A stretch of 64,000 nt of DNA from the NCBI GenBank assembly GCA_002269645.1, contig NIVC01001342.1:62001-126000 (forward strand), in the 5' to 3' direction. The DNA comes from Macrostomum lignano (Eukaryota). Positions 1 to 62,119 of the stretch are shown one piece after another; within the stretch, counting starts at the first letter, position 1, and every line of letters begins with the position of its first letter. Made by a program: the position numbers and the translations under genes. The notes under the pieces were generated by a model. It searched no databases, was not told the origin of the DNA, and saw only the letters and a list, made by a program, of their open reading frames with translations.

Positions 1-1
1 G

Positions 2-1848: not shown

Positions 1849-1891
<43 letters not shown>

Positions 1892-1912
1892 ATGTATGTC
1901 TGTCTGTATGTA

Positions 1913-1949
<37 letters not shown>

Positions 1950-1978
1950 TTCTTAGTGTCTGTCTGTCTGTCTGTCTG

Positions 1979-2015
<37 letters not shown>

Positions 2016-2078
2016 TTCTTAGTGTCTGTCTGTCTGTCTTTCTTAGTTTCTGTCTGTCTGTCTGTCTGTCTTTCTTAG

Positions 2079-2135
<57 letters not shown>

Positions 2136-8816: not shown

Positions 8817-11800
8817 ATGGCTGCACCACAAACTGGTGAGCCTACTTCAGTAAATGTGTCGGTTGGCAGTGCATTCTATTGCAACACTGTCCTTGTGTTA
8901 TAAATGTAGTACAAAATTAGAATCAGGGCAGAGACTCCATCCGAAAACTAGGCTAGTGTGCCTTTGGAGACGAAGAGCTTGATGATGGCTTTCATTAGCA
9001 GCTGTCATCAGCATGGAGACATACAGTATGCCGAGGGGCTTGATGATGGCTTCATTAGCAGCTGTCATCAGCATGGAGACATACAGTATGCCGAGGAGCT
9101 TGATGATGGCTTCATTAGCAGCTGTCATCAGCATGGAGACATACAGTATGCCGAGGGGCTTGATGATGGCTTCATTAGCAGCTGTCATCAGCATGGAGAC
9201 ATACAGTATGCCGAGGGGCTTGATGATGGCTTCATTAGCAGCTGTCATCAGCATGGAGACATACAGTATGCCGAGGGGCTTGATGATGGCTTCATTAGCA
9301 GCTGTCATCAGCATGGAGACATACAGTATGCCGAGGGGCTTGATGATGGCTTCATTAGCAGCTGTCATCAGCATGGAGACATACAGTATGCCGAGGAGCT
9401 TGATGATGGCTTCATTAGCAGCTGTCATCAGCATGGAGACATACAGTATGCCGAGGGGCTTGATGATGGCTTCATTAGCAGCTGTCATCAGCATGGAGAC
9501 ATACAGTATGCCGAGGAGCTTGATGATGGCTTCATTAGCAGCTGTCATCAGCATGGAGACATACAGTATGCCGAGGGGCTTGATGATGGCTTCATTAGCA
9601 GCTGTCATCAGCATGGAGACATACAGTATGCCGAGGAGCTTGATGATGGCTTCATTAGCAGCTGTCATCAGCATGGAGACATACAGTATGCCGAGGAGCT
9701 TGATGATGGCTTCATTAGCAGCTGTCATCAGCATGGAGACATACAGTATGCCGAGGAGCTTGATGATGGCTTCATTAGCAGCTGTCATCAGCATGGAGAC
9801 ATACAGTATGCCGAGGGGCTTGATGATGGCTTCATTAGCAGCTGTCATCAGCATGGAGACATACAGTATGCCGAGGAGCTTGATGATGGCTTCATTAGCA
9901 GCTGTCATCAGCATGGAGACATACAGTATGCCGAGGAGCTTGATGATGGCTTCATTAGCAGCTGTCATCAGCATGGAGACATACAGTATGCCGAGGAGCT
10001 TGATGATGGCTTCATTAGCAGCTGTCATCAGCATGGAGACATACAGTATGCCGAGGGGCTTGATGATGGCTTCATTAGCAGCTGTCATCAGCATGGAGAC
10101 ATACAGTATGCCGAGGGGCTTGATGATGGCTTCATTAGCAGCTGTCATCAGCATGGAGACATACAGTATGCCGAGGGGCTCCGTGCGCTTCAACCCATCT
10201 CTCTATTAGCCAGTCCTGGCCTCTATCCAATTCTAACCAATTCAACAATCTGATTTGCAGTTGATGCTGATATATTAACGGGTGTCAGCCAAGGCGACTC
10301 AACTGCCACAGGTGAGCATGTGCTTGCATGATTGGGCGATGGTGTTTTGTAAAAAAGAAAATCGATTATGCTAATTTAGCGCTGGTGCACCTGCGGCTGT
10401 AATTTGGTCTCGATGAAAATATACAACAGCTGAAACCGAATATTCTAAAACTCAACACTACAGTTATGAATAGGAGAGTATAGTATGATGCAGTTATGGT
10501 ATTTTTAATTTTCCTATGTACATGTACGAGTACTATAAAGTATAACCATCTAGGAACTGAATCTTTATCATGTAGCTATTGTTTCGAACATTCTGGTTCC
10601 AAATGATGCATGCGATCTTGCAGAAGATGCTTATTTTATTGCAGGTGAGACCGATCCGCCATCGATTCCACAGAGCTCGCCTCCTAAAGATAGCGGAGTC
10701 ACTCCACAAAAGGACCAAGGTGAGCATGAATTACTTTGACTTAATGAGTAGCAGTGAACTCAGCTGTCAGGTATTATTCATTATCACAAGTAGTCTGTCG
10801 ACCTTACTCTGGATTTAGTTGAAGCTCTTTAAATGCTTTTTACACACGCAGCCTCACCGACTCTCACTGAATAGCTAAAGCCTCAAATAGCGTCTTCTGT
10901 TTTGTAATATGCCATCAGGGACTGTGTTGCATTACCATTGCGCATTGTCATTGGCTAGTTAGAATGGGACAAGAAACTCGATTTTGGTTCGGAAGAATGT
11001 GGCGAAAAAGCTTTTTCTAAGTAAGCTCCGTATTTGTGTGGGCGTCTGCTGTGTATTTGTTCGCGTGAATTTTATGGCCATGGAAAGAAAGCTCAGCTTT
11101 CTTGACGGCCAAACGCGCTGACGGCCGCATTGCTTGGCATTTTTCCTGGCATGCCAGCAATCTGGGGATCCGCAGACTGCATTGGCTTCTCAGAGCCTAA
11201 GATATTTCTTCATCGCTACCGTATATTGCTTTGCAGTTGCTCCTCTCTCTCTCTCTCTCTCTCTTTATCTCTCTCTCTCTCTCTCTCTCTCATGCACGCC
11301 TCAAACCTAATCTGGCCTCTATGTGTACGGCTGGGGGTAGCTGAGAGTGCCGGTGCACGAGCGCTGCACCAATCGCAGACCGCAGGCCGCCACAATAGGG
11401 ATATTTTTATCCAAATTCAATCGAGGCTTAACTTCCCAGACTTTGTGTCGAGAGCATATTCATGAGGCCAGGCCAGTCCGCACTGCCATCAAACGGGTAA
11501 ATCAGTGTGCATTGTACATTGATCTATGTAGAGTACATCAGTCATGTAATCACACACATTTTTTACTCGTTGATAGCGGTGTGGACGAGCCTTTTTTGAG
11601 CAGAAAGGAGATAATCAATATTTTCCAACCTGTGAAATGTAAATTATTAATTTTTTCATTAGCTCATGGCAAGCAACCAACAATAAATAGTGAAGGAACA
11701 ACGTATTACCCATCTTAACCTATAGCGCTGCAGTGATGTACCTGCGAGAATGGAATTGCAAGCGCGAGATAAAAAACATAATTGGAAATTTTTGCTTCGG

Positions 11801-14800
11801 GAAATTGGACATTGTCGGGTAGCATCGCACCGAACAAACTGAACCTTCTTTGTGATTAGAAGTTCAGGATGTACACTGAAATTAGTAAGATAGCAGGTAG
11901 AAATTAGTTACAAGCGTATCAATGAGTTTGTGACACCGTGCGTACTGCTTACGCTTTACCGCTGTAGAGAAAATAAGACTAAAAACACTAGAACTAAATT
12001 AGATGTTAAATTGAATACTAAGATACGCCAGTAAGTGGGCGCAGGGCCCAAACAAGTATATTTATATGACTAATTTAGAGGGGGGTTGACTCCAGATAAT
12101 AAGGAGAGGGGTGAAGTGCGCGACTGAAGAGAGAGGCGAGAATGGAGAACCAATCAGAAGGCAGCAAGGGAGAGAGAGAGATAAGAATAACAAGATTGAG
12201 CTAGACAGAGAGAGAGAAAACGGAGTAAACAGAGACAATGTGAAGGTGAACTAAAGAAATGACTAGGAAAGTCGCGACACTCCCCCCAAAAAATGGAACA
12301 TTTTTTGAATTTTCGAGTACCATTACCAATTGAAATTAATGAGTTAGAATTAGGTCGAATTAAATTGAAAAACACATTCACAATAAATGGTGTATAAAAC
12401 GATTTGAAAAATACATAATGACTAAGAATTTGAATACAAAAACAGTAGAGCGAATGCAAAATATTAAGACCGAATTTTAAACTTAGATTTTTATTGAGTA
12501 GTTTTTGAACCAATGAGAAGACTGAAAAGACTGAATATATCCACCCTCCCCCTTAAAAATTAGCAATTTTTAATTGTAAATGGCTAGTACAGTTTAGAGA
12601 AAACATTAACATTGTCAGTTGAGTAAGAGAGCTGAGATGAGAGAGATGAGATGAGATGAGAATCAAGTTGATGAAAAGAACAACTGGAGACGACTAGAGA
12701 CAACTGGAGACACTGACAAGAGAGGAGGGGACCGAGTGAAGAAAGTTTGACAAAGACCGGTGAGATTGACTGCCGACACCGACTCCGAAGACGTGACGAC
12801 GGCCCGAGTTGAATTGTGAATATGCCGCCGGCACCGACTCCGAAGACGAGACCGACAGCCCGAGTTGAAATGCGAATATGCTGCCGGCACCGACTCCGAA
12901 GACGAGACCGACAGCCCGAGTTGAAATGTGAATATGCTGCCGGCACCGACTCCGAAGACGAGACCGGCAACCAGAGATGAGACGATTGAGAGGCCGGCAG
13001 ACGAGACGATTGAGAGGCCGGCAACCAGAGACGAGACGATTGAGAGGCCGGCAACCAGAGACGAGACGATTGAGGCCGGCAACCAGAGACGAGACGATTG
13101 AGAGGCCGGCAACGAGACGATTGAGAGGCCGGCAACGAGACGATTGAGAGGCCGGCAACGAGACGATTGAGAGGCCGGCAACCAGAGACGAGACGATTGA
13201 GAGGCCGGTAGACGAGACGATTGAGAAGCCGGCAAGCAGAGACGAGACGATTGAGGCCGGCAACCAGAGAGGAGACGATTGAGAGGCCGGCAACGAGACG
13301 ATTGAGAGGCCGGCAAGCAGAGACGAGACGATTAGGAGTCGATGACGGGATGACGAGATGACTGGTGTAGGGCTACGACAACGACGATGGCATGGCCTTT
13401 GCCAGCCTTACTGTATTGACTGAATTATTTTTCATTGGGCGCCATGTAGAGAAAATAAGACTAAAAACACTAGAACTAAATTAGATGTTAAATTGAATAC
13501 TAAGATACGCCAGTAAGTGGGCGCAGGGCCCAAACAAGTATATTTATATGACTAATTTAGAGGGGGGTTGACTCCAGATAATAAGGAGAGGGGTGAAGTG
13601 CGCGACTGAAGAGAGAGGCGAGAATGGAGAACCAATCAGAAGGCAGCAAGGGAGAGAGAGAGATAAGAATAACAAGATTGAGCTAGACAGAGAGAGAGAA
13701 AACGGAGTAAACAGAGACAATGTGAAGGTGAACTAAAGAAATGACTAGGAAAGTCGCGACAACCGCAGCTTCACCTGTTTTGCATTTCAGTTGAACAACG
13801 CTGCGTTGCGGTATTCAGCAGCAACTTGTCTTCGGAATCTCCTGAAGCAAAAGCCGGAAATGAATATTTTAAATTCATTAAAAGCTGCGGCTTTTCCTCG
13901 AATCCGGATTCCAGTCAGCTCCAGCTAAACCAGCTGATCAAGCGTGATCTTTCGGGCACAAGATTTTCAGTTGTTGTCGTGAATGATAAGGAAATCGGGA
14001 ATTCGCTGAGCTTACAGAACACTCTCGAAGACATTAAAAAATCCAAAACGCAGCGCTGCCTGCTTGTCTACTGCAAGGTTGACAGCAACCGGTCGTTCGA
14101 TACTTCGGTTGACTTTTCTGAGAGCTTCTACCAAGAAAGTTACAAAAACATTTTCTGCTTGTATAAAGTTGCAGCGGCTGATCGGATCGAAAATTTTTTC
14201 AAGTCCTTGAAGGAACATCAAACTCTGCATTGGCAGACGAATTGCATCGGGTCAATTATTCGTAAAGAATCATTCAAAACTTCCATCAAGGAAAAAGGGA
14301 TTGTTGATCTCAAATACGGCACACCTGAATTCGTGCGCTTTCGACAGCCTTGCCGATTTAATGAGAAAAGTAGAGATTATCTTAAAGAGGACTCAAAACT
14401 GCTCAGAACTCAGGATTTGCAGCAGATGAAGCAAGACGCAACAAAAAACGAAGATAAAATGGGTTACTATGAGCGCCATGGCGAACCAACTGCTCTTGTT
14501 GTCAATTGCGTGACCACTGGTGGCGCTGACGCACTCGAAGGTTCAAAAGTAGACAGTGACCGACTGTGCTACTTGTTTGAGAACATGCTGTTTGGTGTAG
14601 TGCAATTTAACAACCTGAAGGCGAGCGAGCTGATTCGTACGGCTGAAGAGTTTAAGGAGCATCACAACCTGTGGATTCTCGTCATAACTGCTTTTGAAAA
14701 AGACGGTAAAATTGAGTGCTCGGACGGCTTAACAGTAACTGAAGCCGAAATTATCAGTGCTTTAAAAAACACTGGCAATCGGTCAGCTCCAAAGCTCGTG

Positions 14801-15253
14801 ATATTCAACTTACGAATAAAAGGAGTTGAGCAAGAATCCACTGACGGTACAAAGGAAAAGGCCGACGCTAGACGGACGAATATCCCATATAATTGCCGGG
14901 AGCTGGCGCAGTATCTTAGAATATCCATGAATACAGATGAATCACATCACAGCCAAGCTGGCCTGGTCACGTGCAGGTATACTGAGCCTCTTTGCGATAA
15001 AACTGGCAGCGAACTGGTCAAAAGCATCTGTACTGCATATTACAAGCATGCCGATAGTAAGGACGTGGTTTCACTAATCAACGAAGTCAACAAATTATTT
15101 CGCCGCCCCTCAATGGATGGTTTCGATGAAAAGCCACGATGGACGTGGCTAACGCACAGAAACTTCTTCTTGTGCAAGACAGACGCGGAGCAGCCGTCGC
15201 ACGAAAAGTCGAATGGAAAAGGAAATTCTTCGCAAGAAAAAAAAGGTTGGTAG
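8817..15253 (+). CDS. Caspase-like gene A, catalytically dead (pseudo-caspase) with N-terminal alpha/beta domain
   Basis: Model: ATG exon 8817-8835 (MAAPQT), micro-exons 10261-10311 and 10645-10719 (both phase 1-1), large exon 13791-15253. Caspase-fold landmarks ALVVN...GSKVDSDRL..LF, PKLVIF, GSELVKSIC, NFFL. No His-Gly dyad; the catalytic Cys position reads N-L-R (Arg codon at 14813). The large exon is well supported, the 5' exons are inferred. Confidence 0.75.
8980..10180. repeat. 60-bp tandem array, about 20 near-identical copies, in first intron of gene A
   Basis: Unit ttgatgatggcttcattagcagctgtcatcagcatggagacatacagtatgccgagg(g/a)gc; no spacers; a single copy exists at ~24123-24186. Confidence 0.97.
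11963..13761 (-). mobile_element. Non-autonomous mini LTR retroelement (TRIM-like), family 1
   Basis: 317-bp LTRs at 11963-12279 and 13445-13761 (TGTA...GACA, no differences seen). 5-bp TSD ACCGC. Minus-strand PBS TGGCGCCCAA (10-nt match to tRNA-Lys PBS). PPT-like ttttttggggggag next to the other LTR. Internal ~1.17 kb of short tandem repeats with no gag/pol. Confidence 0.92.
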
Positions 15254-15575
15254 AATTGTTCCAATTAGGCTTGCAGAAGTTACCAAACGCTTCTGTAAAA
15301 ATGATAATACGAGCGTACGCTTCGTATCCTGCAAGCGTAGCGTTACGCTCATATGATGAAATTCCTTTCGACTGCTTGTACAGTTCATACAGTTCAGATA
15401 ATAACTCTTGAGTGCTTGAAACAATACTGGATGATGGGGTCTCCAATTGGGTATTGTTTTCTGGAACGTGACGGTTGAGTTTGACAATGTGAAATTCGAG
15501 TTTGAAAAATTTCAGTAAGTTAAAAAATGCATGTGAATACCCCGAGTCACTTTATGAAACTTCTAAATTTCAGAA

Positions 15576-17044
15576 ATGCCTGCAGGGCCAAGCGGTTTTC
15601 AACCAGGTAAAATAAAATTTTGTTTTCATGTCGAAGTTATAAATTTCTTGCACAATAATTTACGTGTCAAATTGTCTTTTTAGGTTCCCACCAGGCGCTG
15701 ATACTGTTGGACAGCGGCATCCAACAAAACGATGGGGAAATTTTAAAGAAAGCTCAAGATTTCGAAAAACTTCTTGCTGCCAGTGGCTACCAGGTAAGGG
15801 CAGAGGAAGTTGAGATAACAGAAAAGTTTGAGCTATTCTGCACCCCCAGTGCAGTCACATGTAATGCGAAGTTCGTTCTGGCTCTCCTTGTCTACACTAC
15901 GTATCGCGACCTGCAGCAATTCAAGAATAAACTTGAAAAACAAGCAAGCAATGCTAAGGACATTGTTGTTTTTTCATGCGAAATCGGATCGCAGAATGAA
16001 CAGCAAGTAACGAAAATCAGTGACAAAATGTTTCACGTTAGCGTTCGTAACAGTGCAAAAGTAATCTCTGAATGTATTCAGAAGTGGCTGGATAAAGTTA
16101 AAATCAGACAGCAAGCAGAACAACTCCAGGGTGGAAAAGAATTCCCTGTGATACCGCTTCCGCGACGACGCGAAGAAACATTAAATACAGATGAAGCTTT
16201 GGTTTTTTCGAATGTTGGACACGACGAAGAAGTAAAAGAACCGATTGAAGGGAAAAACACTATTTCAAAACCTGAGGGGAAGCGCCCACGCCTCCTGATA
16301 GTCAGCAACGCTATATTCCCTAAATGTGAGGATGACAGACTGGCCAGTCTGTACGATACTGCAGTTCTGCGTCATCTTTTCCAGCAGTTTTACTACCGAA
16401 TTTCCATCTGGCACAATTTGAGCTCCGAAGCTTTGCGAACAGTGGTTGAGGAGTTCTCCAGCCTTAAAGATCACAGCAAAACCTCTGTTATCGTTTTTAT
16501 GTCACACGGAGAGCTCGGAAAAATTACGGGAGTTGATGACAAAAGCGTTGAGGAAAACGATCTGTTTGAATCCCTAAACAACATTAAAGAGCAGAAGCTT
16601 GTAGTCATTCAATCCTGCAGACACCGCGGTGCTGAACGAAATGTCGTCTGTAAAATACCGGCTAACACGATAGTTGCTTACTCCACCGCTCCTGGAGACT
16701 ATAGTAGTCGAAAGGACGGTTATGGTAGCAGGTTTGTTCTCACCCTCTGCCAGGCCTTTGCTGATTATGTTCGTGACATTCCGAATGAGCAACTGGATGT
16801 TATTGAGATCAGCAAGTTCGTTAACTATCGCATGATGCACTATTATGAAAAGCCTAATTATCCTGATGAGCCTAGTCATCTTGCTACAGATAGCCACCAG
16901 TGGCAGCTGCCGTGTTGGACAGCCACAACAACAGAGAAGTTCTGGTTGGTTAATGCGGACAACAAGGCGGACAATAATGCGGACAATAATGCGGACAATA
17001 ATGCGGAAAATAATGCGGATAATGAAGACAATTCAGTTGCCTGA
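15576..17044 (+). CDS. Caspase gene B, intact catalytic dyad, with N-terminal alpha/beta domain
   Basis: ATG exon 15576-15606 (MPAGPSGFQP), 77-nt intron, exon 15684-17044. SHG (His at 16505), QSCR (Cys at 16616), S1 arginines in DDRLAS and YSSRKDG, GSRF, EKFWL. Confidence 0.9.
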
Positions 17045-18699
17045 TCAGATGGACTGAGGAGCCTGAGGCAAGGCCAGAACAATTTAAAAGCAAATAAAAC
17101 TAATAATAGCTACAACTGACTGACAAAGCATGTCCTTTACCCTTTGCTTATAGTGTTGATGCTCATTCACACCACATCTTAAAACCAGGCCAAGCTTAAT
17201 AATGTTAATCACGTGGCTTTTTAAATTTTTTCAGTGCCGTAATTTGATAGCAGTGTGAGCGAGCGTGACGCGTAAATCTTGACTCAAAAATATTTGCATG
17301 ATTTGTTTACGCTCTCATTCAAGGCTTAATCTTACTCTGAAGATCAAATCAAATGCTCAGCTTACAAGACTTGCTTTTTCGATTGCTAATTCATCAGTTA
17401 TTGCTATCATTAGAGTATACTCTGTAAAAATGAAATAAAAATCGATTGGAATCTTTATATCAGATAATACATAGTTTATCATTTCAGTTGGTTCCCCAAT
17501 CAATTAGCCCCAGCGTATGTATATTAAACATGAGTACAGCTGTGCAGGTTTTTTAGGTATTGCCATGCTATCACGCAATTGCACACAAACTCAAATCAGT
17601 TGACTAGCATACGCCATTGCCCAATATTGAAGTCATTTTAAATAAATCATTCAATTGCTCAATTCATTCTTATACGTAAAGCATGAAATTTGAAACGAAT
17701 TCCTCACGTTACCAGGGCGGGGAAAGAGTACAAAGTTTATTAAAGGCTGAGCAATTTGATTGATTCTCCAGTAAAAATGGTATTTATAAGCAGATTTTTA
17801 TGAAACAGTGTTTCTGTCAAATAGGTCAATGCATGTTTTCAAATTTGAAAAATGATTTCTCTCTAAGTTAAGGGCGGCTCTCACATAAATTAATTATTTA
17901 ATATTGTCACCTGTTCTGCATTATATTGCAGTTATAATTTATTATATATTATATCGCATTACCTTACATTGTATTTAGCTAGCATGTGTCGCGTGTCTGT
18001 GTGAGACTTTCTTGGCTTTAAACCCTCTTGAGCACCTTTTGTGTCTGATTTTGCTTCTTATAACTTTGCAATTGTAGTTTTTGCATGTTAGTTACATTTA
18101 GCTATTTTATAAGCTAAAAATTGAAGTTAATAATTTTCCTCTGCCATTAATACACTTTTTGACTAATGCCATTCTCCCCTGGTGCTTCAGTCGTGGGCTG
18201 GAACACCCGTGCACGCCACTTCCTTGAGCAGTTTCTATTCGGCAGGGTTAACATCTGTGCTGTGCTCGAGGAATCGTCTCTAAGCAGGTAGCAGGGAATG
18301 AAGCACCGCGCGATCCCCACCAATTTTTCGATTCTGACAATTTTTTCAAGGGATTCAAAGTTCAATTTTATTAAAGAATCGTGAAGAAACCTAATAAGGT
18401 GTCGGAGCTGCTTTATTTTGTCTTTTGATTCAAAATACGCTGGTAGCTACTCATTTCAAATATGTACTTTACTGCACGGGTGCTGGTTTGAGTCTTTGCT
18501 ATTCTGCTTTCTATTTATGATTATCTATAATCAAAGAAAACTAATTTCAATAATAAAAATCTATAAATCAGTTTCTTCGTTATATAATACTTTTTATCAT
18601 AAGTTCGTGTGTAGAACCGATTGTTGTTAAATCATTATTTATTCCACAGAATCTGCTGCTTCATTGCGTTCTTTTTATTTCTGAGAAAGTATCTAATCG

Positions 18700-18754
18700 C
18701 CATCACCATCATCAGCATCACCATCATCATCACCATCACCATCATCACCATCAA

Positions 18755-18790
<36 letters not shown>

Positions 18791-18800
18791 TATAACCATC

Positions 18801-18832
<32 letters not shown>

Positions 18833-19750
18833 CATCATAATCATTATAACCATCATCATCATCATCATCATCATCATTATCATCATCATTATAACCATCA
18901 TCATCATCATCACCATCACGATCACCATCATCATTATCATCATCATCATCATCATCATAATCACCATCTTCTTCTTCTTCTTCTTCCACCTTTTTTTCGC
19001 CTCCCGGCGTAGGTGGCACCCTGTGTTTCGGGCGTTTCCTCTTCTTGTCACTCGCCGCATGCTCTCTCGTGCCGTGCCATGTTGGTTGCTGACAGCCATC
19101 TCTTACAGTATCGACATTCTGCTCTCTTCCTTTTGTGGATCCTTGCTATCATTCTCGCCGCTTCGTCGTTCGTCCTCGGTCCTTCCATTGCATGGGGCTC
19201 CTCCTCGCACTTCTTCCTGTGTCTTGCGTAGTTAGTCTTACTGATCCACTTTTTACAGTTGTTACATTCTCTTCTTGTGCCTTCCGTCCTGCCTCCCGTG
19301 CACCATTTCTCGTGATTTTTTCTTGTCGCTTCCGTTCTGAACTCGCTGTTGCATCTCTCGCATCTCATTCTTATGCCCGTATCGGTCTTGTGCATTCTTT
19401 TTTGGTGGATGGCTAAGCCTCCTCTCGATCTGCATACTTTACCGCAGTTCTTTTCCCAACACCTGAAACCTGTCAGTTCGTTTTCATCCGTTTGAGTGCT
19501 GTTGAGCTGGTTTTGTTCCTCCCGTCCTTCGTCGTCTCTTTCTGCACCCTTGCATCTCAGCCGTTCGATCTTTTGCCACTCGACGTTTCTTTTCCTGATG
19601 ATCTCTTTCCACTTGATCCTGTCGTTCGCGTATTGTCCTACCTTGAGTGGATCGAGTTTTGTTTTCCGGACCAGCTTTTTCCAGTAGGTGATGATTGTAG
19701 TTCTTCTCTTCTTCTGTCTTCCCCCCAGACTTCCCCCCATCATCATCAAG
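18700..19750 (-). mobile_element. 5'-truncated non-LTR retrotransposon (RTE-like) 3' end with (GAT)n tail
   Basis: ORF 19048-19749 carries the LINE C-terminal ANDRIKWKEII motif and four C2H2/C2HC fingers (CxxxxCGKVCRSRGGLAIHQKRMH etc.), followed by a ~270-bp (CAT)n array at 18700-18970. No RT domain remains. Confidence 0.6.
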
Positions 19751-21664: not shown

Positions 21665-21895
21665 AAGCTCGAAATTTCACAACATCGAAACCAGTTATTT
21701 TCATAAGCTCGAAATTTCACAACATCGAAAATTTCAGCAGCCGACTTCATATTCATAAGCTCGAAATTTTACAAGCTCGAAATTTCACAACCTCGAAAAC
21801 CATTTTAGCAGCCACTTTCACAAACCCGAAACTTCATAAGCTCGAAATTTCATATCCTCGAAAATTTTAGCAGGCGACTTCATAAGCTCGAAAGC
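21665..21895. repeat. Degenerate aagctcgaaatttcacaac tandem repeat
   Basis: Direct reading, about 6 copies. Confidence 0.75.
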
Positions 21896-22734
21896 TAGAG
21901 TGAAAAATACAAATACAGTATATTTTCGAGGTTCACCAAGCCACCAAGACATGGCACTACTATAGGCTCGCCCACGGGGGTAGGGGGGAGAGCTTTTATT
22001 GAATTTAATTGATTTGACTCTTATAGTTTTACTTAGTTTTACTACTGTACTGATTTAATCTGTTTTATTTTTCTAAACTCGATCACTAAAATACTAAAGT
22101 ATCGCACTAATTGGAAACCAAAATACATCAATTGCGTAAGAGCCCCCTCAGGGCTGAAGCGCAGGGCCTTCGTTTGCTCATTACTTATCAATGAATGAAT
22201 GAATGAATGAAAGGAAAAAGATTTCGTATATAGCCGCGAACAGAATTCGAATTACATACAAATTCGTAATTCACATACGGACAGTTCCCAGAATAATACA
22301 TAAGTTTGTCTGTCACTCATTTTGCGCAAGACACCCAGACACTGCATGTAAAAAACTGCAAAAGGACTTTTAACAGCTTTGTCATACAGACAGATCAACA
22401 GACAGACAGACGGCTTTTGCAGCAGCTACTTATCTACATGCACCTAGGCGCTGGGTAAATGTTTTAGCAGACAAAAAACCAAATACTTTTACCAAGTGCT
22501 GCTCTGTCTAAGAAGAATAATTTATTCTTTTTTCTCTTCATTATATATTCATTAACTGCGTATTAACTGCTGCGTATTACATTTGTTATATTACAGCCAT
22601 ATTTCCGGTGGTCTAAGCCGCGTTGTAGGCCATGAAGTTATCGTACTCTTCACAAATTTAAAGCAAATTTACTGTTTTAATTCTTGGCAAAACTTTTCTC
22701 GTTCATAAAATACTGGTGGACTCAGTATTCGTCT

Positions 22735-23245
22735 CAATTGGCGCCTAAGGTCAAATTTGGCGCCAGGACCCCCAAAATTGGCGCCGAAAGCTAAATTTGG
22801 CGCCAGGATCCCCAAATTTGCGCCAGGATCGCCGAAATGCTGAAATCAGCTCGAGAGGACCCAAACTAGCCCTGGAAAGCTCAAACTAGCGCTGGAGAGC
22901 TCAAATTGGCGCGGGAAAGCTCGAATTGGCGCCGAAAGCTAAATTTGGCGCCAGGATCCCCAAATTTGCGCCAGGATAGCCGAAATGCTGAAATCAGCTC
23001 GAGAGGACCCAAACTAGCCCTGGAAAGCTCAAACTAGCGCTGGAAAGCTCAAATTGGCGCGGGAAAGCTCGAATTGGCGCCGGAAGCTAAATTTGGCGCC
23101 AGGATCCCCAAATTGGCGCCAGGATCGCCGAATCAGCGCTGGAATGTGCCAACGGGCGTAGAAGTGGCAGCATATATCAGCTTGCTACTTTTTGGCGCCG
23201 ATTTTAATATACCGGCGCCAATTTCAGCCTTTGGGCGCCTATTTT
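22735..23245. repeat. ggcgcc-rich repeat with internal tandem duplication and inverted ends (foldback-like)
   Basis: Repeated aaatttggcgccaggatcccc and aagctcaaactagc blocks; ggcgccaaattt inverted at the right end. Confidence 0.6.
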
Positions 23246-23897
23246 AGCGCCCTGGCAAGGTCAATGCATTTAGTTCTCACGCGATGGAGCCAAAAAAAAT
23301 TTTTTCTTTTTTTTGAATTAGTGCCATGTATCTTGCCAACCAATACGAGTCAAGTTCTGGCGTCTGCTTCTCCACAGCCGCCTTGCTGGGTCCCGTTAAC
23401 AAGCTTTTTTTAGCGTGGGAAACTGTCTGACTCACTCATTGGATCCCCCGAGTCCACGGGTGCAAGGGCTAGCCAAGGTGGACCCACGGTGGAGCCACCT
23501 GGCTAGCCACGTATTTTTTGTTTAGTGGACTGCATGGCTAGCCTGGGAAAATGCTCTGCTGAAACAGCTGCATTGCCCCCCCCCCTCTGTACAAGTACAT
23601 TCACCCTCATTCCTCTACTACTGCACAGTTTAACCAGCCGAATGTGTGTCCGTTAAAGAGAAGCTGACTGAGTCAGCCGCGTTCCCGTGGCTTGCCATAT
23701 ATGGGGCTTTTTCTCCAGATTTTTTTGTGTGAAGCGCTTGCGCTGGAGAGAGTTCTCTTTTTTTCGGAGCAAAATAAAGCTTATTGCAGTTTGACTGTTT
23801 TGACCCAAGCAACGCCTGTTGTGTCTTGAACGCTAAAGACGCACCTTTCCGTTCAAATAGCACGGAAAGTTCTTCCGGTACAGGAGCCGCACGAGTT

Positions 23898-24447
23898 ATG
23901 GCTGAAACCGGTGAGCAAAAGCTGAGCAAAGCGTGATTTAAGCTCAGCTGTCCATACGAGCGTAATTGTCTCTTCGTGTATTGAGCCTACTTCAGTAAAT
24001 GTGTCGGTTGGCAGTGCATTCTATTGCAACACTGTCCTTGTGTTATAAATGTAGTACAAAATTAGAATCAGGGCAGAGACTCCATCCGAAAACTAGATTA
24101 GTGTGCCTTTGGAGACGAAGAGCTTGATGATGGCTTTCATTAGCAGCTGTCATCAGCATGGAGACATACAGTATGCCGAGGGGCTCCGTGCGCTTCAACC
24201 CATCTCTCTATTAGCCAGCCCTGACCTCTATCCAATTCTAACCAATTCAACAATCTGATTTCCGATTTCCAGTTGGATCTCTTGTAGCGGATCGCAACCA
24301 AAGCATCTCAGCTCCAGCGGCCACAGGTGAGAACTTGCATTGGGCGATGGTGTTTGTGAAGAAGACAATCGATTATATAAATTTAGCGCTGCTCTACCTG
24401 CAGCTGTAATTTGGTCGGGGATTTGCAGACTGCATTGGTTTCTCTCT

Positions 24448-24532
<85 letters not shown>

Positions 24533-27005
24533 GTCTCTCATGCACGCCTTAAACCTAACCTACTCCTTGTACAAGTATTCAATAAATAAAAATTTTAGCG
24601 TTAGAGAAGTTGAAAACAGAAGTAGACTTTTGAACCTCGTTAGTGGAGACGTGCTTCTAAGAAGTGACGTGAGCGCGTGTCCAGTAAGAGGGCCTGGTAG
24701 AGAGAAATGGGTGAAGAGGTCCAACAGCAGTCAGTGGTGGCGCTCTCCCGCGTTTCCATAACCTGCAAGGCTGAGCTGCATGGGTCTCTCCTACAGATAT
24801 TTTTGAGCAGTGCAGTGCTTGCGCAGGAGAGAGGGTTCTGTTCCGGGGAAAAATAAAGCTTATTGCAGTTTGGCTGTCTCGATCCAAGCAACGCCTATTG
24901 TGTTTTGAACGCTAAAGGCAGATTCATTTTTTCAACGGCATCAAAGAGCATAGAAGGTCCTTCCGGCGCAGGAGCCCCGGAAGTTATATTCAGCTCACAA
25001 GAAGTTGAGCAAAAGTCGAGCAAAGCCTGCTTTAAGCTTAGCTGACGATAATTGTCTCTTCGTGTAATGAACTCTTGTCAGGAACACAGGGAAGGATAGA
25101 GAGCTTATATTACGTAATTAGCTGGTAGAACCATAGCCTACTCTAGTGAATGTGTGTCAGCAGCAGTGCATTCTATTACAACACTGTTCCTGTGTCATAA
25201 ATGTAGGACAAATTTAGAAGCAATTTTGTGCGGTTGCTATTTTGTAAAAATTAATTCTGGTACGCCGCCATAGCCATGGAAATATTTTGAATAACTGTTA
25301 AAGTTATTACTACTAGCTCTAGTCTGCGTATGGAGACGAATAGCTTGATGATGGCTTTTCATCAGCATGGATGCATAATACAGTATATCACTGATGACCC
25401 TGCTGAGGAGCTACGTACGCTTCAACCCAACTCTCTATTAGCCGGTCCTGGCGGCCTCTATCTAATTCTAACAACCAATTCAACAATCTGAATTGCAGTT
25501 ACGGATTGCAGACATAGCAGCACAACTTCAACAGGTGAGAATGTGCTTGAATGATTGGGGCAACGGTGTTTTGTGCAGAACCGGATGCGTTACTGCTCCG
25601 ATACTCAGCCCCAAACGCAAACTTTTTAACGCAAATCTTTTTTAATTGCATTTCAGACAGGAAGGCATTCTTTTTGAATATCACATCGAATACAGACTTC
25701 AAAAAGTACCTGGAGGACTGCGATTTTCAGTTGAAAGAATGCAATAACATTGATGAATGTACGAATCTGCTCACTGCTGAGAAGTCAGTTAAACTACAAG
25801 CAGTTCTTGTAGTGCATTCTGACAGTTCGGAACTCGATGATCAACTTAAGGCTCTATTCGAGGCATTCGATAGTGGCGAAAATGGTCAGCTGGAAAGACT
25901 TCTGATTGTTTGTGGAAACAAGGATCTGAAGGAGAAGCTGCGTGACAAAAAGAATCAACAAGCAATATTACTAAACGTGAATTTCCTATGTACGAGTAAA
26001 AAAGACGAAGAAGACACAGATGAAAGTGAGCTAAACGAGATCGCAGGCATGTTAATTGAAAACGAAAATCTTCAAAACACAGTTATAAATTTCAGTAGGA
26101 GCTCTAAAGACAAAATCGATAGTAGAAAATTCTACTATATTCCTGGCGGCGCCGGGTTTACGTTTTCGAGGAATCGTCTGAAAGAAAAAATCCCAAAATA
26201 TATCAAAACAGAAAACACTTCTGAAAACACAGAAAACAGAAAACCACCTTACAAACCACACAAGAATCGCGCTCTCATTCTTGTGAGCAAATCGCTACAC
26301 GATGACAAATCTGATTTGGGCAGAAGTGCAAGGATGGACGTTACGAATCTGCAAGACGCACTTGAGCACGCCAAATTTAGTTCTCATCAATGCAAAACAA
26401 TCACTGTAGATTTTGACTCTGTAGAATATGAGAACCTGTTCAAAAATGAGAACAATGAACAGCCGTCAGAGGATTCCAGGCCTTCCCATGTGGTTGTCAT
26501 CCTTGCTGAAAAGACCGAAGTCGAGAAAGCTAACACACTGCTCACTAAAATTAGCCAAGGCAGTTGTTTTTCCAACTCGCACAGGCTGGTTGTTGTTCAT
26601 CTGCGAGAGCGCTTAGATGTGATTACCATGGATGATCGAACTGCAGGGGAAGTTACTGATTCAGCGTCTGATGGTCCAACTCCAGACTTGCACTTTCACA
26701 AACAAAGCGGTCTGATCATAGTCAGATCTGAATCAACCCCTGCTGATGCCTGTTCCCTCCTGGGTAGCCGCTTCGTGCTCGCTCTGTGCTCAGCAATTTA
26801 CTTCGGTGCCGGCAACACAGATGTGGCTTCAATGATCTGCCCCATCAACAGCATCGTCAAGAACGGCTTTTCAAACAAACTTTGCGCGAACTTTGCGGAT
26901 CAAAATGTTGAAAATAATCTGCTTCTCCCGTACTGGATTGTGCAGACAACCGATGAATTCTTTCTTGACGAGGATAACGGTAAATTCACATTTGAACTGT
27001 CATGA
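23898..27005 (+). CDS. Caspase-like gene C, catalytically dead (pseudo-caspase), paralog of gene A
   Basis: Model: ATG exon 23898-23910 (MAET), micro-exons 24273-24326 and 25499-25534 (phase 1-1), large exon 25657-27005. Caspase landmarks RALILV...GRSARMDVTNL, RLVVVHLR, ST(P)...GSRFVLALC, EFFL. No His-Gly; Arg (26604) at the catalytic Cys position. The 5' region is clearly homologous to the 5' region of gene A. Confidence 0.72.
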
Positions 27006-27312
27006 CTACTTTATATTGTTTTACAAGTGTGTATTACCACATTTCGTTAGATATGGTACACATAATGGCGCTCAGATGAGTACAGATCAAATCACTTACG
27101 AACTCATAAAATCACAGCTGCTAATAATATAGAATTCAACAGTAGCTGTCATAGGCGCAGTCATGCAAATGGTCGAAAATATTCCATAAGCCAGGATCGG
27201 AGGTTGAAGATTTATTAAAAAACTAATGGTTAACATGTAGAAACAGATTAAAGTTAGCCAGATAAAATTGAATTATCTCACATTTCCAACAAAAAAATCC
27301 TATATCTACACT

Positions 27313-28767
27313 AGTAAGCATAAATTAAAATATTTAAAAAAAAATTTGAACCTTGCCATTGATTTCATTTCAGTGCCATCAAAGACACAACCAAAAACCA
27401 AACGTAAGGCAAAATTTAATTTTATTCAGAACTTTGTTGACTCGCATCTACAGTAATTCTGTCTAAAAATTTTAGCATTCGAACCATCAACAACAGCTCT
27501 CATCCTTGCCAAGCAAATGGAGAAGAAAGTTGACGGACTCCGCATTGCTCTGGAGGCAAATGGATGGAAAGTGCACGCTGAATATGGAGACTTTCAGACA
27601 GCACCAGACGACACTTCAAAGTTTACAGTTGTAATTGCTAGCTACGAGCTAGCTAGCGATAGCACATTTGAAAAAGATGATAAACTTGGCGTTTGGATTA
27701 AAACTGATAGTGAGCAGCGAAAGGAAAAAATAATTGAACTCCTTAATAAATTTGATAAATCAGAGACAGTCACGCTGTGCTCTTGTGCTGTCGGTTCGGA
27801 AGGTTTTGACTGCACTTGCAAGAAGTGCAAAGACAGTGCAAGTCATGAACCACTGATCTGCGTCAACTGCAAAGAGTGCGTCCGCTGCAGAGACAAACCT
27901 AAATCGTCATCGAAGAAAGTTTGCAAAAAATGTGGCCTGGCTAAATTTTACCGTGCAATCACAGTCGATCCAGCCACAGTCGATCCGGAAATACCCGTGC
28001 CGGAATGCTCTAGTAGTGAAGAGACAAAAAGCAGCAGCGAGGCACTGTGGAAGCTGACACAGCCAGATGAAAAACAAAGCTATTCAACTCCCGATCCCAG
28101 CACCCGCGTGCTCATCATCAACAATCTCATATTCGGCAGACATGGCAATCGCTTGGGTTCCGAGAAAGACACTCAGAGACTGTTAAAAGTGTTCACTGAA
28201 TTGGGATTCAAAGTTTCAATCAGAACCAATCTGACAGGGAAACAAATACATGATTTAGAGTTAAAAGATGACGTTGCTATTCTTGTACTAATGACTCACG
28301 GTATAGTAGGATACCTGTACGGATGCGACGATGATGATGCAAAAGAAAAAGATATTCTACAAAAGTTTGCCGGAAAAAGAACCGATAAACCGAAGCTGCT
28401 GATTTTCCAGGTGTGTCGCAACTATAGCGACGGTGTGTCGGACGAAAAAAACGAGCGCGAACCTCTGCCTGAATACGAGGACGTCATTGTGGCGCACTCA
28501 ACTGTGCCACTAGAGACGAGTGCGAGAGAGGGGTCAAAGGGGTCTCGATTCATCACTTCGCTATGCTCGGTGTTCCAGCAGTTTGGTAAGGAAGAAGACG
28601 TCGTGTCCATGATCGAGCGAGTCAATTACGAAATGGCGCACAAAAATTCAGCCGATAAGCGGCAGGTGTCCTCCTGGCTGGTGCGAATGGACAAAAAGTT
28701 TTTCCTGGCTCCGGCTGAGCAGAGAGCAGCTGGTAAAGCAGTTCAGCAACAACAGCAGAGCCAATAG
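27313..28767 (+). CDS. Caspase gene D, intact catalytic dyad, with N-terminal alpha/beta domain and Cys-rich insert; paralog of gene B
   Basis: Model: A at 27313, 60-nt intron, exon 27374-27403, 72-nt intron, exon 27476-28767. VLIINN...RLGSEKD, THG (His 28297), QVCR (Cys 28414), TSAREG, GSRF, KKFFL. Confidence 0.9.
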
Positions 28768-59649: not shown

Positions 59650-60005
59650 TTAATACAGTTATAGTTACTTCTGCCGTTTACCCAAGATTATGTTTATTTT
59701 GCCTAGGTTTCTTTCATAGGCAAGCAAGTAAGTCGCATGGCCAGTCTAAATCAGGGGGGTTGCGCCTGTATGAGTAATATATTTCATTATCTATTAAAAT
59801 GCCTCTCATCTTGCATAGGGGCCTAACCTTACATTTTAGCAATGCCTTTGATTTCTTTTTTGGCTTTACTTCAAGTCCGATAGTCTTAGGCTCAAGAGTA
59901 GACACTTCAGAATTAATAAATGTTTCCAGGCTGCTTAAAACAGCTGCTTTGAGTCTGAAAATTATTTTTTTATATGGAGAATCACTTTCCTGCACTTAAT
60001 TTTAG

Positions 60006-62071: not shown

Positions 62072-62119
62072 GTAAGGACTGCGGAGTCCTTGGCGCTGGC
62101 TTCCTTGGGAGGGTTTGCT

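What the first reader, a model, noticed from the sequence alone, without database searches (positions are those of the whole stretch)
8817..28767. Duplicated two-gene module: pseudo-caspase immediately followed by an intact caspase
Seen: four co-oriented caspase-fold genes in the order dead(A)-active(B) ... dead(C)-active(D). A and C share homologous 5' flanks and micro-exon layout. B and D share a distinct layout: a ~60-nt first intron, a 10-codon MP-starting exon and a 72-77-nt phase-1 intron. In both copies the active gene starts about 0.3 kb after the dead gene's stop. The proteins have diverged heavily, yet the pairing and open frames are retained. Known: cFLIP/CFLAR is a dead paralog linked to caspase-8/10 that heterodimerises with and tunes it. 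Inference: this is an independently evolved regulator/effector caspase pair maintained as a unit, possibly an innate-immune or cell-death switch. None of the four shows a recognisable CARD, DED or death domain.
Basis: partly seen in the sequence, partly recalled or inferred. Interest (0 to 1): 0.9.

Follow-up and report, generated by a model that had tools for sequence, protein, structure and literature searches.

The report
Flatworm dead-plus-active caspase tandem genes
Two neighbouring loci in the flatworm Macrostomum lignano each encode a catalytically dead caspase copy followed by an intact caspase, but they are probably single genes that splice the two halves into one protein rather than regulator/effector gene pairs, and the same layout occurs at several other loci in this genome.

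Summary
The window is Macrostomum lignano contig NIVC01001342.1. It carries four co-oriented caspase-like reading frames in the order dead (A), active (B), dead (C), active (D). B and D keep the His/Cys dyad and both S1 arginines. A and C lack all four residues.

The "two-gene module" reading is only partly supported.
- The public RNA-seq-based model for this locus (BOX15_Mlig027753g1) splices A in frame into B's first exons, over A's stop codon.
- Older UniProt models do the same for C into D.
- Paralogous loci (Mlig018970, Mlig020397, Mlig007987, A0A1I8GLC7) encode dead and active halves as one continuous protein of 691–1017 aa.
- All junction introns are phase 1, so the 0.3 kb "intergenic" gaps behave as introns.

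Each half also starts with an unannotated ~150-aa domain that weakly resembles a degenerate caspase large (p20) subunit.

A quartet test favours A+C|B+D (95%) and rejects A+B|C+D (0.6%). Whether the dead state arose only once is unresolved. The near-identical 5' flanks of A and C are recent (gene conversion), not a relic of the duplication.

Nothing supports an immune role. Tandem dead/active caspase models also exist in insects, shrimp and molluscs. Moderate interest: an uncharacterised, lineage-expanded variant of a known theme.

The parts
8817..8835 (+). Gene A exon 1 (MAAPQT plus one base; phase-1 donor gtgagc)
   Evidence: Matches the GenBank model P0003/BOX15_Mlig027753g1, whose coding sequence starts at window 8817.
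10261..10311 (+). Gene A micro-exon 2 (phase 1 to 1)
   Evidence: tblastn of P0003 at 100% identity; ttgcag/gtgagc boundaries.
10645..10719 (+). Gene A micro-exon 3 (GETDPPSIPQSSPPKDSGVTPQKDQ). It has a homologue in paralogue P0002 but none upstream of C in this window.
13791..15253 (+). Gene A main exon. N-terminal alpha/beta domain ~13796-14278. Pseudo-caspase domain ~14480-15178, with Phe at the His position (14693-14695) and Leu at the Cys position (14810-14812). Stop codon 15251-15253.
   Evidence: Pfam C14 3.5e-7; alignment to CED-3; hhalign 96% to B+D; residue table.
15246..15573 (+). 328-nt phase-1 intron of the annotated transcript (donor AAG|GTTGGT, acceptor tttcag|AA). It removes A's stop and joins A in frame to B's exon 2. 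It contains no AATAAA or ATTAAA.
   Evidence: The P0003 junction reads ...QEKK|EMPAGPSGFQP|GSHQ. The fused A-B frame is 997 aa with no stop.
15574..15606 (+). B exon 2: AA followed by ATG CCT ... (MPAGPSGFQP plus one base). A possible own 5'UTR exon ends at 15515, followed by a 58-nt intron (inferred only).
15684..17044 (+). Gene B main exon. N-terminal domain ~15686-16105. Active caspase domain ~16280-16954, with His 16505-16507 (SHG) and Cys 16616-16618 (QSCRH). AATAAA lies at 17093. B is not annotated as a protein in the public databases searched.
   Evidence: Pfam 2.4e-28; Protein Data Bank (PDB) caspase-3/7 hits; no database entry except P0003's 37-aa overlap.
18189..18283 (+). Terminal coding exon of the annotated isoform. 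It is reached from a donor inside B's N-terminal domain (15793|gtaagg), so this isoform encodes A, 47 aa of B and a 31-aa tail, and skips B's protease domain.
23898..23910 (+). Gene C exon 1 (MAET plus one base), homologous to A exon 1 (inferred model)
24273..24326 (+). Gene C micro-exon 2 (phase 1 to 1), homologous to A exon 2 and to the N-terminus of P0002 (inferred)
25499..25534 (+). Optional second copy of the micro-exon, lying in a partial duplicate of C's 5' module (24804-25574). It is open and phase 1 to 1. Whether it is used is unknown.
25657..27005 (+). Gene C main exon. N-terminal domain ~25659-26051. Pseudo-caspase domain ~26262-26972, with Glu at the His position (26508-26510) and Leu at the Cys position (26601-26603). 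Phase-1 donor ACG|GTAAAT at 26979|26980, nine codons before the stop.
   Evidence: No Pfam hit; hhalign E 3.6e-5; family HMM E 2.6e-22.
27374..27403 (+). D exon 2 (the TG of the start codon plus PSKTQPKTK plus one base). The A of the ATG would come from an upstream exon ending at 27313, across a 60-nt intron (inferred). Alternatively the exon is joined in frame to C's donor at 26979.
27476..28767 (+). Gene D main exon. N-terminal domain ~27490-27951, with a Cys-rich insert at 27778-27933. Active caspase domain ~28096-28713, with His 28297-28299 (THG) and Cys 28414-28416 (QVCRN).
   Evidence: Pfam 3.6e-33; PDB caspase-7 8.6e-20; the UniProt models P0001 and P0002 join C's donor to this exon's acceptor.
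8461..10409 (+). 5' module of A (promoter region, exon 1, intron 1 with a 60-bp x20 tandem repeat at 8977-10180, exon 2). It is 79-99% identical in DNA to 23577-24416 upstream of C, and partly to 24804-25574.
   Evidence: Self-blastn; Tandem Repeats Finder. The module is absent from the paralogous loci L002-L004.

Best explanation
The window holds two adjacent members of a multigene family so far found only in Macrostomum lignano.

Each locus is most likely one transcription unit with the architecture [N-domain + pseudo-caspase]-[N-domain + active caspase]. The halves are joined in frame by splicing of phase-1 introns. The 'stop codons' of A and C and the ~0.3 kb 'intergenic' gaps lie inside those introns.

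The main product would be a single polypeptide (A-B 997 aa; C-D 893-903 aa) with only one working active site, in the C-terminal domain.

Inferred mechanism: caspases form their active sites only as dimers across the beta6/alpha5 face. The tethered dead domain keeps that p10-side face better than its p20 side. It would therefore act as the built-in dimer partner of the single active domain. This is a covalent version of the cFLIP(L)-procaspase-8 heterodimer, or of separase's pseudo-protease plus active-protease pair.

Alternative splicing could set the ratio of dead-only to dead+active product. The annotated A isoform skips B's protease domain, and stop codons follow the donors.

Shown: domain content, loss of catalytic residues, in-frame junctions, annotated fused transcripts, recurrence at other loci, and constraint on the dead halves.

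Inferred: dimer-like packing, the regulatory role, and isoform control.
For: 1. The window is 100% identical to NIVC01001342.1 of assembly GCA_002269645.1. That assembly's gene models come from RNA-seq assemblies (StringTie/TACO, TBONE, TransDecoder; PMC5730564).
2. Its model P0003 uses the junction 15245|15574, reading A straight into B's exons in frame.
3. P0001 and P0002 (UniProt models from another assembly) fuse C to D through 26979|27476.
4. All fused frames are open.
5. A profile search of 1.84 billion proteins returns M. lignano paralogues as the top non-self hits:
   - P0004, 691 aa: [N][dead][active]
   - P0005, 1017 aa: [N][dead][N][active]
   - P0006, 838 aa: [dead][N][active]
   - P0171, 849 aa: the full four-part layout
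   Each has exactly one R-H-C-R site, in the last domain.
6. At their loci the dead reading frame also ends a few codons after a consensus phase-1 donor (GTGAGT or GTAAGT). The active half begins at a phase-1 acceptor. The intron is only 70 + 76 nt in L002, 305 nt in L003 and about 2.4 kb in L004. Four transcript-derived junctions, all in frame, would arise by chance with a probability of about (1/3)^4.
7. No polyadenylation signal lies between A's stop and B's exon 2. AATAAA follows B's stop by about 45 nt.
8. The M. lignano spliced leader ends in ATG (PMC8629364). Joined to B's or D's exon-2 acceptor, that ATG is out of frame and terminates early. This argues against an operon or trans-splicing resolution of the pairs.
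9. Constraint on the dead halves:
   - pN 0.359 against a saturated pS 0.774 for the P5/P4 dead units, compared with 0.442/0.754 for their active units.
   - The P4/P5 dead domains are 52% identical, against 39% for their active domains.
   - Dead domains are more conserved on the p10 (interface) side than the p20 side, 35% against 27%.
10. The AlphaFold2 model of P0004 has pLDDT 71. Its dead domain scores 78-92 and shows the canonical caspase strand/helix order. pTM is 0.66, about twice what one rigid domain of 230/691 residues could give. The best fold matches are CED-3 and caspases-9, -3 and -7.
Against: - No read-level RNA data could be inspected. The fused junctions rest on deposited models.
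- The C-D fusion comes only from ab initio predictions. C and D are not annotated in GenBank.
- The annotated A isoform does not include B's protease domain. No public model contains B's full frame, so a full A-B fusion protein is not documented.
- The fusion donors in the window are weaker (GTTGGT, GTAAAT) than those at the paralogous loci, and the introns are longer.
- B and D both keep an ATG-Pro start preceded by a plausible ~60-nt intron. D's ATG exists only if that intron is spliced. This suggests independent active-only transcripts.
- ATTAAA variants occur after C's stop.
- The first AlphaFold2 model, of C itself, was unusable (pLDDT 41.7).
Confidence: 0.55

Rival explanations
1. One reading: A, B, C and D are four separate genes. 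Each dead gene is a trans-acting regulator (cFLIP-like) of the adjacent active caspase. The fused database models are read-through or prediction artefacts.
For: - Each dead frame has its own stop, and each active gene has its own ATG-Pro start.
- A GT...AG intron of 58-60 nt precedes that exon in both B and D. D's ATG is created only by that splice.
- ATTAAA signals follow C's stop.
- P0001 and P0002 are ab initio models.
- About 7% of M. lignano assembled transcripts are multi-gene precursors (PMC5730564).
- In L003 the active half has an in-frame ATG 22 nt upstream of the acceptor, which could give a stand-alone 248-aa caspase.
Against: - Transcript-derived models at four loci cis-splice the halves in frame.
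- In L002 the two halves are separated only by 70- and 76-nt introns, which leaves no room for a promoter.
- No polyadenylation signal follows A.
- Phase-1 compatibility is kept at every locus examined.
Confidence: 0.25
2. Operon model: each pair is a dicistronic unit. Spliced-leader trans-splicing at the acceptor of B's or D's exon 2 resolves it into separate dead and active mRNAs.
For: - About 15% of M. lignano genes lie in operons, with typical intergenic distances of 100 bp to 1 kb (PMC8629364).
- The pairs are co-oriented and 0.3 kb apart.
- The acceptors tttcag|AAATG and tttcag|TGCC look like outron acceptors.
Against: - The spliced leader ends in ATG. At either acceptor that ATG opens an out-of-frame reading that stops after 17 codons (B) or 63 codons (D) and overlaps the real start.
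- The TBONE pipeline cuts models at mapped spliced-leader sites, and it did not cut P0003 at 15574.
Confidence: 0.08
3. A and C are decaying pseudogenes left by tandem duplication of active caspases and have no function. The ordering is coincidental.
For: A and C have lost all four catalytic and S1 residues. C is so diverged that Pfam misses it. C and D are not annotated in GenBank.
Against: - The 449-487-codon frames are open, with a chance probability near 1e-13, despite saturated synonymous divergence.
- Structural core motifs are kept.
- A is transcribed and annotated.
- The same dead-first order recurs at five or more further loci.
- Dead units show pN well below pS.
Confidence: 0.05

Closest known systems
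cFLIP(L)/CFLAR with caspase-8/-10 (vertebrates)
   Same: A caspase-like domain that has lost its catalytic residues sits next to active paralogues in the genome. Pairing with the active protomer across the caspase dimer interface is known for cFLIP(L) (my own knowledge and PMC7586951). Here it is only inferred.
   Different: These proteins have no DEDs. The dead domains nest inside a Macrostomum-specific clade, so they are not CFLAR orthologues. Dead and active halves appear to be joined in one polypeptide rather than recruited to a death-inducing signalling complex. Both halves carry an extra N-terminal p20-like domain.
Separase (clan CD, family C50): pseudo-protease domain plus active protease domain in one chain
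   Same: A degenerate caspase-fold domain sits immediately N-terminal to an active caspase-fold protease domain in the same polypeptide and supports it. This comparison rests on my own knowledge of the separase structures and was not tested here.
   Different: There is no sequence relationship. The flatworm domains are true family C14A caspases: Pfam PF00656, with CED-3 and caspase-3/-7 as best matches. No separase-type helical region is present.
C. elegans CSP-2/CSP-3 caspase-like inhibitors of CED-3
   Same: Lineage-specific, catalytically inert caspase paralogues that restrain an active caspase by binding it (my own knowledge).
   Different: CSP-3 is only a small-subunit-like fragment and is encoded at a separate locus. 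Here the dead unit is a full p20+p10 domain placed in cis.
Invertebrate proteins with two or three caspase (CASc) domains
   Same: They carry tandem caspase domains in one gene model, some with a degenerate copy. Examples are Drosophila gunungcola LOC128254441 (dead + active), Penaeus vannamei LOC113826633 (active + 2 degenerate), and Physella and Mytilus models. Four two-CASc caspases are reported in Mytilus coruscus (PMC10967218). A transcript-like contig assembled from a public sequencing run encodes a 520-aa dead+active protein.
   Different: None carries the N-terminal domain, which the HMM finds almost only in M. lignano proteins. None has been studied functionally. The order and number of dead copies differ.

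Membership tests
Caspase, peptidase family C14A (B and D) | Caspase domain detectable by sequence and fold | tested here: met
   Pfam PF00656 at 2.4e-28 (B) and 3.6e-33 (D). PDB caspase-3/-7 and CED-3 hits at 1e-11 to 1e-19.
Caspase, peptidase family C14A (B and D) | Catalytic His (xHG) and Cys (QxCxx) dyad | tested here: met
   B has SHG and QSCRH. D has THG and QVCRN. The residue after Arg is His or Asn rather than Gly.
Caspase, peptidase family C14A (B and D) | S1 pocket arginines (Arg179/Arg341, caspase-1 numbering) that give Asp specificity | tested here: met
   The R-H-C-R pattern is present at HMM-aligned columns in B, D and every active paralogue. Asp specificity itself was not assayed.
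Caspase, peptidase family C14A (B and D) | Proteolytic activity and activation by dimerisation or linker cleavage | not testable with these tools
   Needs recombinant enzyme assays. B's inter-subunit linker is very short and has no Asp.
Pseudo-caspase (A and C) | Caspase fold retained | tested here: met
   A: Pfam 3.5e-7, CED-3 3.5e-6, hhalign 96%. C: hhalign 71%, E 3.6e-5, and family HMM 2.6e-22. C's own AlphaFold2 model was too poor to use. The dead domain of paralogue P0004 models as a caspase fold at pLDDT 78-92.
Pseudo-caspase (A and C) | Loss of catalytic residues | tested here: met
   A has Leu/Phe/Leu and C has Gly/Glu/Leu at the Arg179/His/Cys columns. Arg341 is also lost in both.
Pseudo-caspase (A and C) | Maintained by selection rather than decaying | tested here: met
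   Open frames with chance probability near 1e-13. For A-C, pN is 0.55 against a null of 0.73, with pS saturated. Paralogue dead units give pN 0.36 against pS 0.77. A true dN/dS could not be computed because dS is saturated.
cFLIP/CFLAR orthologue | Tandem N-terminal death effector domains | tested here: not met
   Pfam finds no DED, CARD or death domain in A-D. The N-terminal region has no Pfam family.
cFLIP/CFLAR orthologue | Phylogenetic grouping with caspase-8/-10/CFLAR rather than with lineage-specific caspases | tested here: not met
   All M. lignano dead and active domains form one group, separate from 10 outgroup caspases (100% bootstrap for the split). The best PDB matches are effector-type caspases and CED-3.
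cFLIP/CFLAR orthologue | Heterodimerises with and modulates the active caspase | not testable with these tools
   No multimer prediction, predicted aligned error or model coordinates were available. pTM 0.66 for P0004 hints at fixed inter-domain packing.
   Quartet bootstrap: AC|BD 94.7%, AD|BC 4.7%, AB|CD 0.6%. In the neighbour-joining tree the dead clade has 59% support. Caveats: the distances are saturated, and a dead-domain HMM from P4-P6 scores D as high as A. A single origin of the dead state is therefore unresolved.
Spliced-leader-resolved operon | Downstream gene receives the spliced leader at its first acceptor, giving a translatable mRNA | tested here: not met
   The leader's terminal ATG is out of frame at both acceptors. 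The annotated model is not cut there. Read-level spliced-leader data were not available.

The most novel reading that the evidence does not exclude
These loci encode natural single-chain caspase heterodimers. A tethered pseudo-caspase serves as the obligatory dimer partner of one active domain. Alternative splicing at the dead/active junction would then yield dead-only, fused or active-only products from one locus. This would be a cFLIP(L)/cFLIP(S)-style life-or-death rheostat that evolved independently in a flatworm, caught part-way through gene fission at the A-B and C-D loci. Asp-containing motifs just after beta6 (LDED in C, KTD in A, ITD in P0004) could let the protease release its own partner.
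Probability: 0.2. Interest if true: 0.65.

Novelty: new variant of a known kind. Interest (0 to 1): 0.42.

Why it matters
Pseudo-caspases that tune active caspases are known from very few systems: cFLIP in vertebrates and CSP-2/-3 in nematodes. A flatworm family in which the dead partner is wired in cis to the active protease, and has been kept through repeated duplication, would be an independent origin of that logic. It would also be a natural test of whether one active site per caspase dimer is enough.

M. lignano is transgenic and RNAi-tractable, so this can be tested.

There are practical points for annotators too. The public annotation of this locus is incomplete: B's full frame is in none of the protein databases searched, and C and D have no GenBank gene model on this contig. 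In addition, a ~150-aa N-terminal domain shared by the whole family has no Pfam model.

Limits: the architecture also appears in uncharacterised gene models of other invertebrates, and no link to immunity or to any phenotype is shown.

Tried and rejected
- The word-indexed homologue search returned almost only self hits: P0001/P0002 for D, P0003 for A, and nothing for B. It reached no paralogues. The exhaustive profile search was needed.
P0001 and P0002 have no contig on record. No read-level or transcript-contig evidence for this locus could be obtained.
- An hhalign of C against an alignment that included P0002 was invalid, because P0002 contains C's own C-terminus. It was redone locally with B+D only.
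- AlphaFold2 of C with a 4-sequence alignment gave pLDDT 41.7 and was not used for fold search.
- The fold search of the P0004 model returns only single-domain caspase hits and does not report which part of the query matched. It says nothing about the N-domain or the inter-domain packing.
- dN/dS could not be estimated for any pair because pS is 0.73-0.84, which is saturated. Only pN-versus-pS and pN-versus-shuffled-null comparisons are reported.
- The A-B and C-D junction regions share no DNA similarity. The A/C 5' module is absent from the paralogous loci.
- Literature searches for these gene identifiers and for tandem pseudo-caspase/caspase proteins found nothing specific.
- The idea that the shared 5' flanks reflect the original module duplication was rejected, because the exons' synonymous sites are saturated.

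Full report
**Identity of the window.** The A reading frame matches GenBank protein PAA-series BOX15_Mlig027753g1 (P0003) at 100%. The contig carrying it, NIVC01001342.1 of Macrostomum lignano assembly GCA_002269645.1, is 100% identical to the window over the 28,283 bases compared. Window position 1 corresponds to record position 62001. This is therefore a free-living flatworm genome with short GT-AG introns.

**The observation.** Four long + strand frames are present.
- Pfam's caspase domain hits A weakly (3.5e-7) and hits B and D strongly (2.4e-28, 3.6e-33). It does not hit C.
- B and D match solved caspase-3/-7 and CED-3 structures.
- A matches CED-3 at 3.5e-6, with Ala-Phe-Glu where CED-3 has Ser-His-Gly.
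- C alone finds no solved caspase. It aligns colinearly to a B+D profile (hhalign E 3.6e-5). It scores E 2.6e-22 against an HMM built only from the active domains of paralogues.
- A family alignment and HMM-column read-out give Arg-His-Cys-Arg (S1 Arg, catalytic His, catalytic Cys, S1 Arg) in B, D and every active paralogue. At the first three columns A has Leu/Phe/Leu and C has Gly/Glu/Leu, and the second S1 Arg is also lost in both.

- A and C share homologous first exons and phase-1 micro-exons.
- B has a 58-nt intron and D a 60-nt intron in front of a 10-codon Met-Pro exon. In D the ATG is split A|TG across that intron.
- B has a 77-nt and D a 72-nt phase-1 intron after that exon.
- The gap from the dead gene's stop to the active gene's ATG is 323 nt (A-B) and 308 nt (C-D).

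**One gene or two.**
- The GenBank annotation of this assembly is built from RNA-seq assemblies, cut at mapped spliced-leader and poly(A) sites, with coding sequences called by TransDecoder (PMC5730564).
- Its model for this locus, P0003, runs through A's four exons. It leaves A at a phase-1 donor two codons before the stop (15245|GTTGGT) and enters the acceptor of B's Met-Pro exon (15574). It continues through B's 77-nt intron and 110 nt of B's main exon. It then leaves at a strong donor inside B (15793|GTAAGG) for a terminal exon at 18189-18283.
- A's "stop" and the "intergenic" 328 nt are therefore an intron in the only transcript-based model. That isoform encodes the pseudo-caspase plus a 78-aa tail.
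- B's full frame is in none of the protein databases searched.
- For C-D, two UniProt models, P0001 (same locus, older assembly) and P0002 (a paralogue whose D part is 89% identical), join a phase-1 donor nine codons before C's stop (26979|GTAAAT) to the acceptor of D's main exon.
- I checked that the full fusions are open: A-B 997 aa and C-D 893 or 903 aa.

**Paralogues.** A profile of A-D searched against 1.84 billion representative proteins returned M. lignano proteins as its best non-self hits.
- Mlig018970g1 (P0004, 691 aa): [N][dead][active]
- Mlig020397g1 (P0005, 1017 aa): [N][dead][N][active]
- Mlig007987g1 (P0006, 838 aa): [dead][N][active]
- Mlig012807g1 (P0007) and Mlig005710g1 (P0011): [N][active]
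- UniProt A0A1I8GLC7 (P0171, 849 aa): the full four-part layout

Each fused protein has a single catalytic site, in its last domain.

At the three loci I fetched, the dead reading frame again ends just after a consensus phase-1 donor, and the active half starts at a phase-1 acceptor.
- In L002 the halves are separated only by a 70-nt intron, a ~120-nt exon (which contains an ATG, like B's and D's small exon) and a 76-nt intron.
- In L003 the intron is 305 nt, and in L004 about 2.4 kb.

The A-B and C-D junctions are thus homologous to ordinary introns of a tandem-domain gene. In-frame joining at four transcript-derived junctions is unlikely to be chance.

**The operon alternative.** M. lignano has many operons resolved by spliced-leader trans-splicing. 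However, its leader ends in ATG (PMC8629364). Placed on B's or D's acceptor, that ATG opens an out-of-frame reading.

**What keeps the two-gene reading alive.**
- The window's fusion donors are weak.
- B and D retain their own Met-Pro starts, each with a plausible upstream intron.
- ATTAAA signals follow C's stop.
- I could not inspect reads.

I rate the single-unit model at about 0.55 and strictly separate genes at about 0.25.

**The N-terminal domain.** All units begin with a ~150-aa alpha/beta region that has no Pfam family. An HMM of it finds essentially only M. lignano proteins among the 150 best caspase hits. Profile-profile comparison aligns it colinearly with the caspase p20 half (75%, E 2.4e-5). 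A frequently retained Cys-Arg sits at the QACRG position, but there is no His. In the AlphaFold2 model of P0004 it has the b1-a1-b2-a2-b3-a3-b4 order at pLDDT 56-70. I regard it as a probable degenerate caspase-like half-domain. This is inference.

**Phylogeny and selection.**
- A neighbour-joining tree separates the M. lignano family from the outgroup caspases. It places A, C and the three other dead domains together at only 59% bootstrap.
- A four-taxon bootstrap favours A+C|B+D in 94.7% of replicates and A+B|C+D in 0.6%.
- However, a dead-domain HMM from P4-P6 does not prefer A and C over D, and the distances are saturated. A single origin of the dead state is not established.
- A and C do share Leu-Arg at the Cys-Arg position, whereas P4-P6 share Trp or Tyr.
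- Synonymous sites are saturated in every comparison (pS 0.73-0.84). Non-synonymous differences are well below saturation. The P5/P4 dead units give pN 0.359, against 0.442 for their active units. A-C gives 0.551, against a shuffled null of 0.728.
- The P4/P5 dead domains are more alike (52%) than their active domains (39%). Dead domains are better conserved on the p10 side, which carries the dimer interface, than on the p20 side.
- Together with frames that would stay open by chance with probability near 1e-13, this shows the dead halves are maintained.

**The 5' flanks.** The stretches 8461-8841, 8837-9040 and 10112-10409 match 23577-24416 at 79%, 99% and 83% DNA identity. Yet the adjoining main exons are saturated at silent sites. 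The shared promoter, exon 1, intron 1 and exon 2 module must have been homogenised recently by gene conversion or segmental transfer between neighbours 15 kb apart. It is absent from the other loci. It is not a trace of the old duplication.

**Mechanism (inferred).** Caspase active sites form on dimerisation across beta6/alpha5. A tethered, catalytically empty caspase domain that preserves that face is best read as a built-in partner, giving a single-site enzyme. This resembles cFLIP(L)-procaspase-8 in trans and separase's pseudo-protease/active-protease pair in cis (both from my own knowledge). The P0004 model's pTM of 0.66 exceeds what one 230-residue domain in 691 could give, which suggests a defined multi-domain packing. 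I could not see which interface is used. Splicing choices at the junction could shift output between dead-only and fused forms.

**Comparison and novelty.**
- These are not CFLAR orthologues. They have no DEDs and sit in a lineage-specific clade.
- Tandem caspase models with degenerate copies exist in Drosophila gunungcola, Penaeus vannamei, Physella, Mytilus and others. They have been noted in a mussel survey (PMC10967218). A transcript-like contig from an unidentified sample encodes a 520-aa dead+active protein.
- A lophotrochozoan caspase survey that included M. lignano does not mention this family (PMC11463336). No paper cites these gene identifiers.
- Nothing in the neighbourhood suggests immunity.

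The finding is a real, uncharacterised, lineage-expanded variant of a known theme. It is of moderate rather than high interest.

Noticed in passing
window 8977-10180, compared with 24116-24185: A 60-bp unit is repeated 20 times at 99% identity in intron 1 of A. The homologous intron of C has one copy. The 204 bases that start both introns (8837-9040 and 23982-24185) are 99% identical, far above the 79-83% of the surrounding flank.
   Followed up: partly
window 11963-12279 and 13445-13761: A perfect 317-bp direct repeat brackets G+C-rich minisatellites (12626-13333; periods 23, 30, 56 and 181) inside A's 3-kb third intron. It could be a recent tandem duplication, a repeat-flanked insertion or an assembly artefact.
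   Followed up: no
window 23577-24416 and 24804-25574: C's 5' module is partly duplicated. In the second copy the start codon is destroyed (ATATTC), but an open phase-1 micro-exon remains (25499-25534) that could be spliced in. The homologue of A's third micro-exon (PPKD-containing) is missing upstream of C. A (CT)n tract lies there instead (24455-24539), and A has one at 11243-11291.
   Followed up: partly
window 27778-27933 (D N-terminal domain): A Cys-rich insert, CSCAVGSEGFDCTCKKCKDSASHEPLICVNCKECVRCRDKPKSSSKKVCKKC, carries several CxxC pairs and looks like a zinc-binding module. It is absent from B and from the other paralogues. It has no Pfam match.
   Followed up: partly
window 16951-17023 (B C-terminus): A 12-nt repeat of about six copies encodes an (ADNN)n acidic/Asn tail at the end of B.
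   Followed up: no
window 15707-17044; 23898-28767: There are annotation gaps. B's full frame is in none of the protein databases searched. C and D have no GenBank gene model on this contig and exist only as fused UniProt predictions from an older assembly. One of those (P0001) drops part of C's p20 region and alters D's C-terminus.
   Followed up: yes
window 18701-19749: A (CATCAT)n tract at 18701-18968 lies next to a minus-strand 233-aa frame (19048-19749). That frame has weak C2H2/XAF1-type zinc-finger matches below Pfam thresholds. It may be a mobile-element remnant between the two caspase loci.
   Followed up: partly
L002 3318-4274 and L004 13908-15192: The paralogous tandem loci have additional stand-alone short caspase genes next to them (318 aa, Mlig005126g1, and 325 aa). 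The 318-aa one groups with P0006's active domain at 100% bootstrap. The family therefore sits in larger caspase clusters.
   Followed up: partly
window 1-4000, 46000-54700, 60000-62400: The flanking genes look like housekeeping genes: a PolQ-like helicase/polymerase upstream, a GLG1-like protein with Cys_rich_FGFR repeats, and a succinyl-CoA ligase-type CoA-ligase domain. Several G+C-rich (60-66%) blocks are full of short tandem repeats that produce long spurious reading frames.
   Followed up: partly
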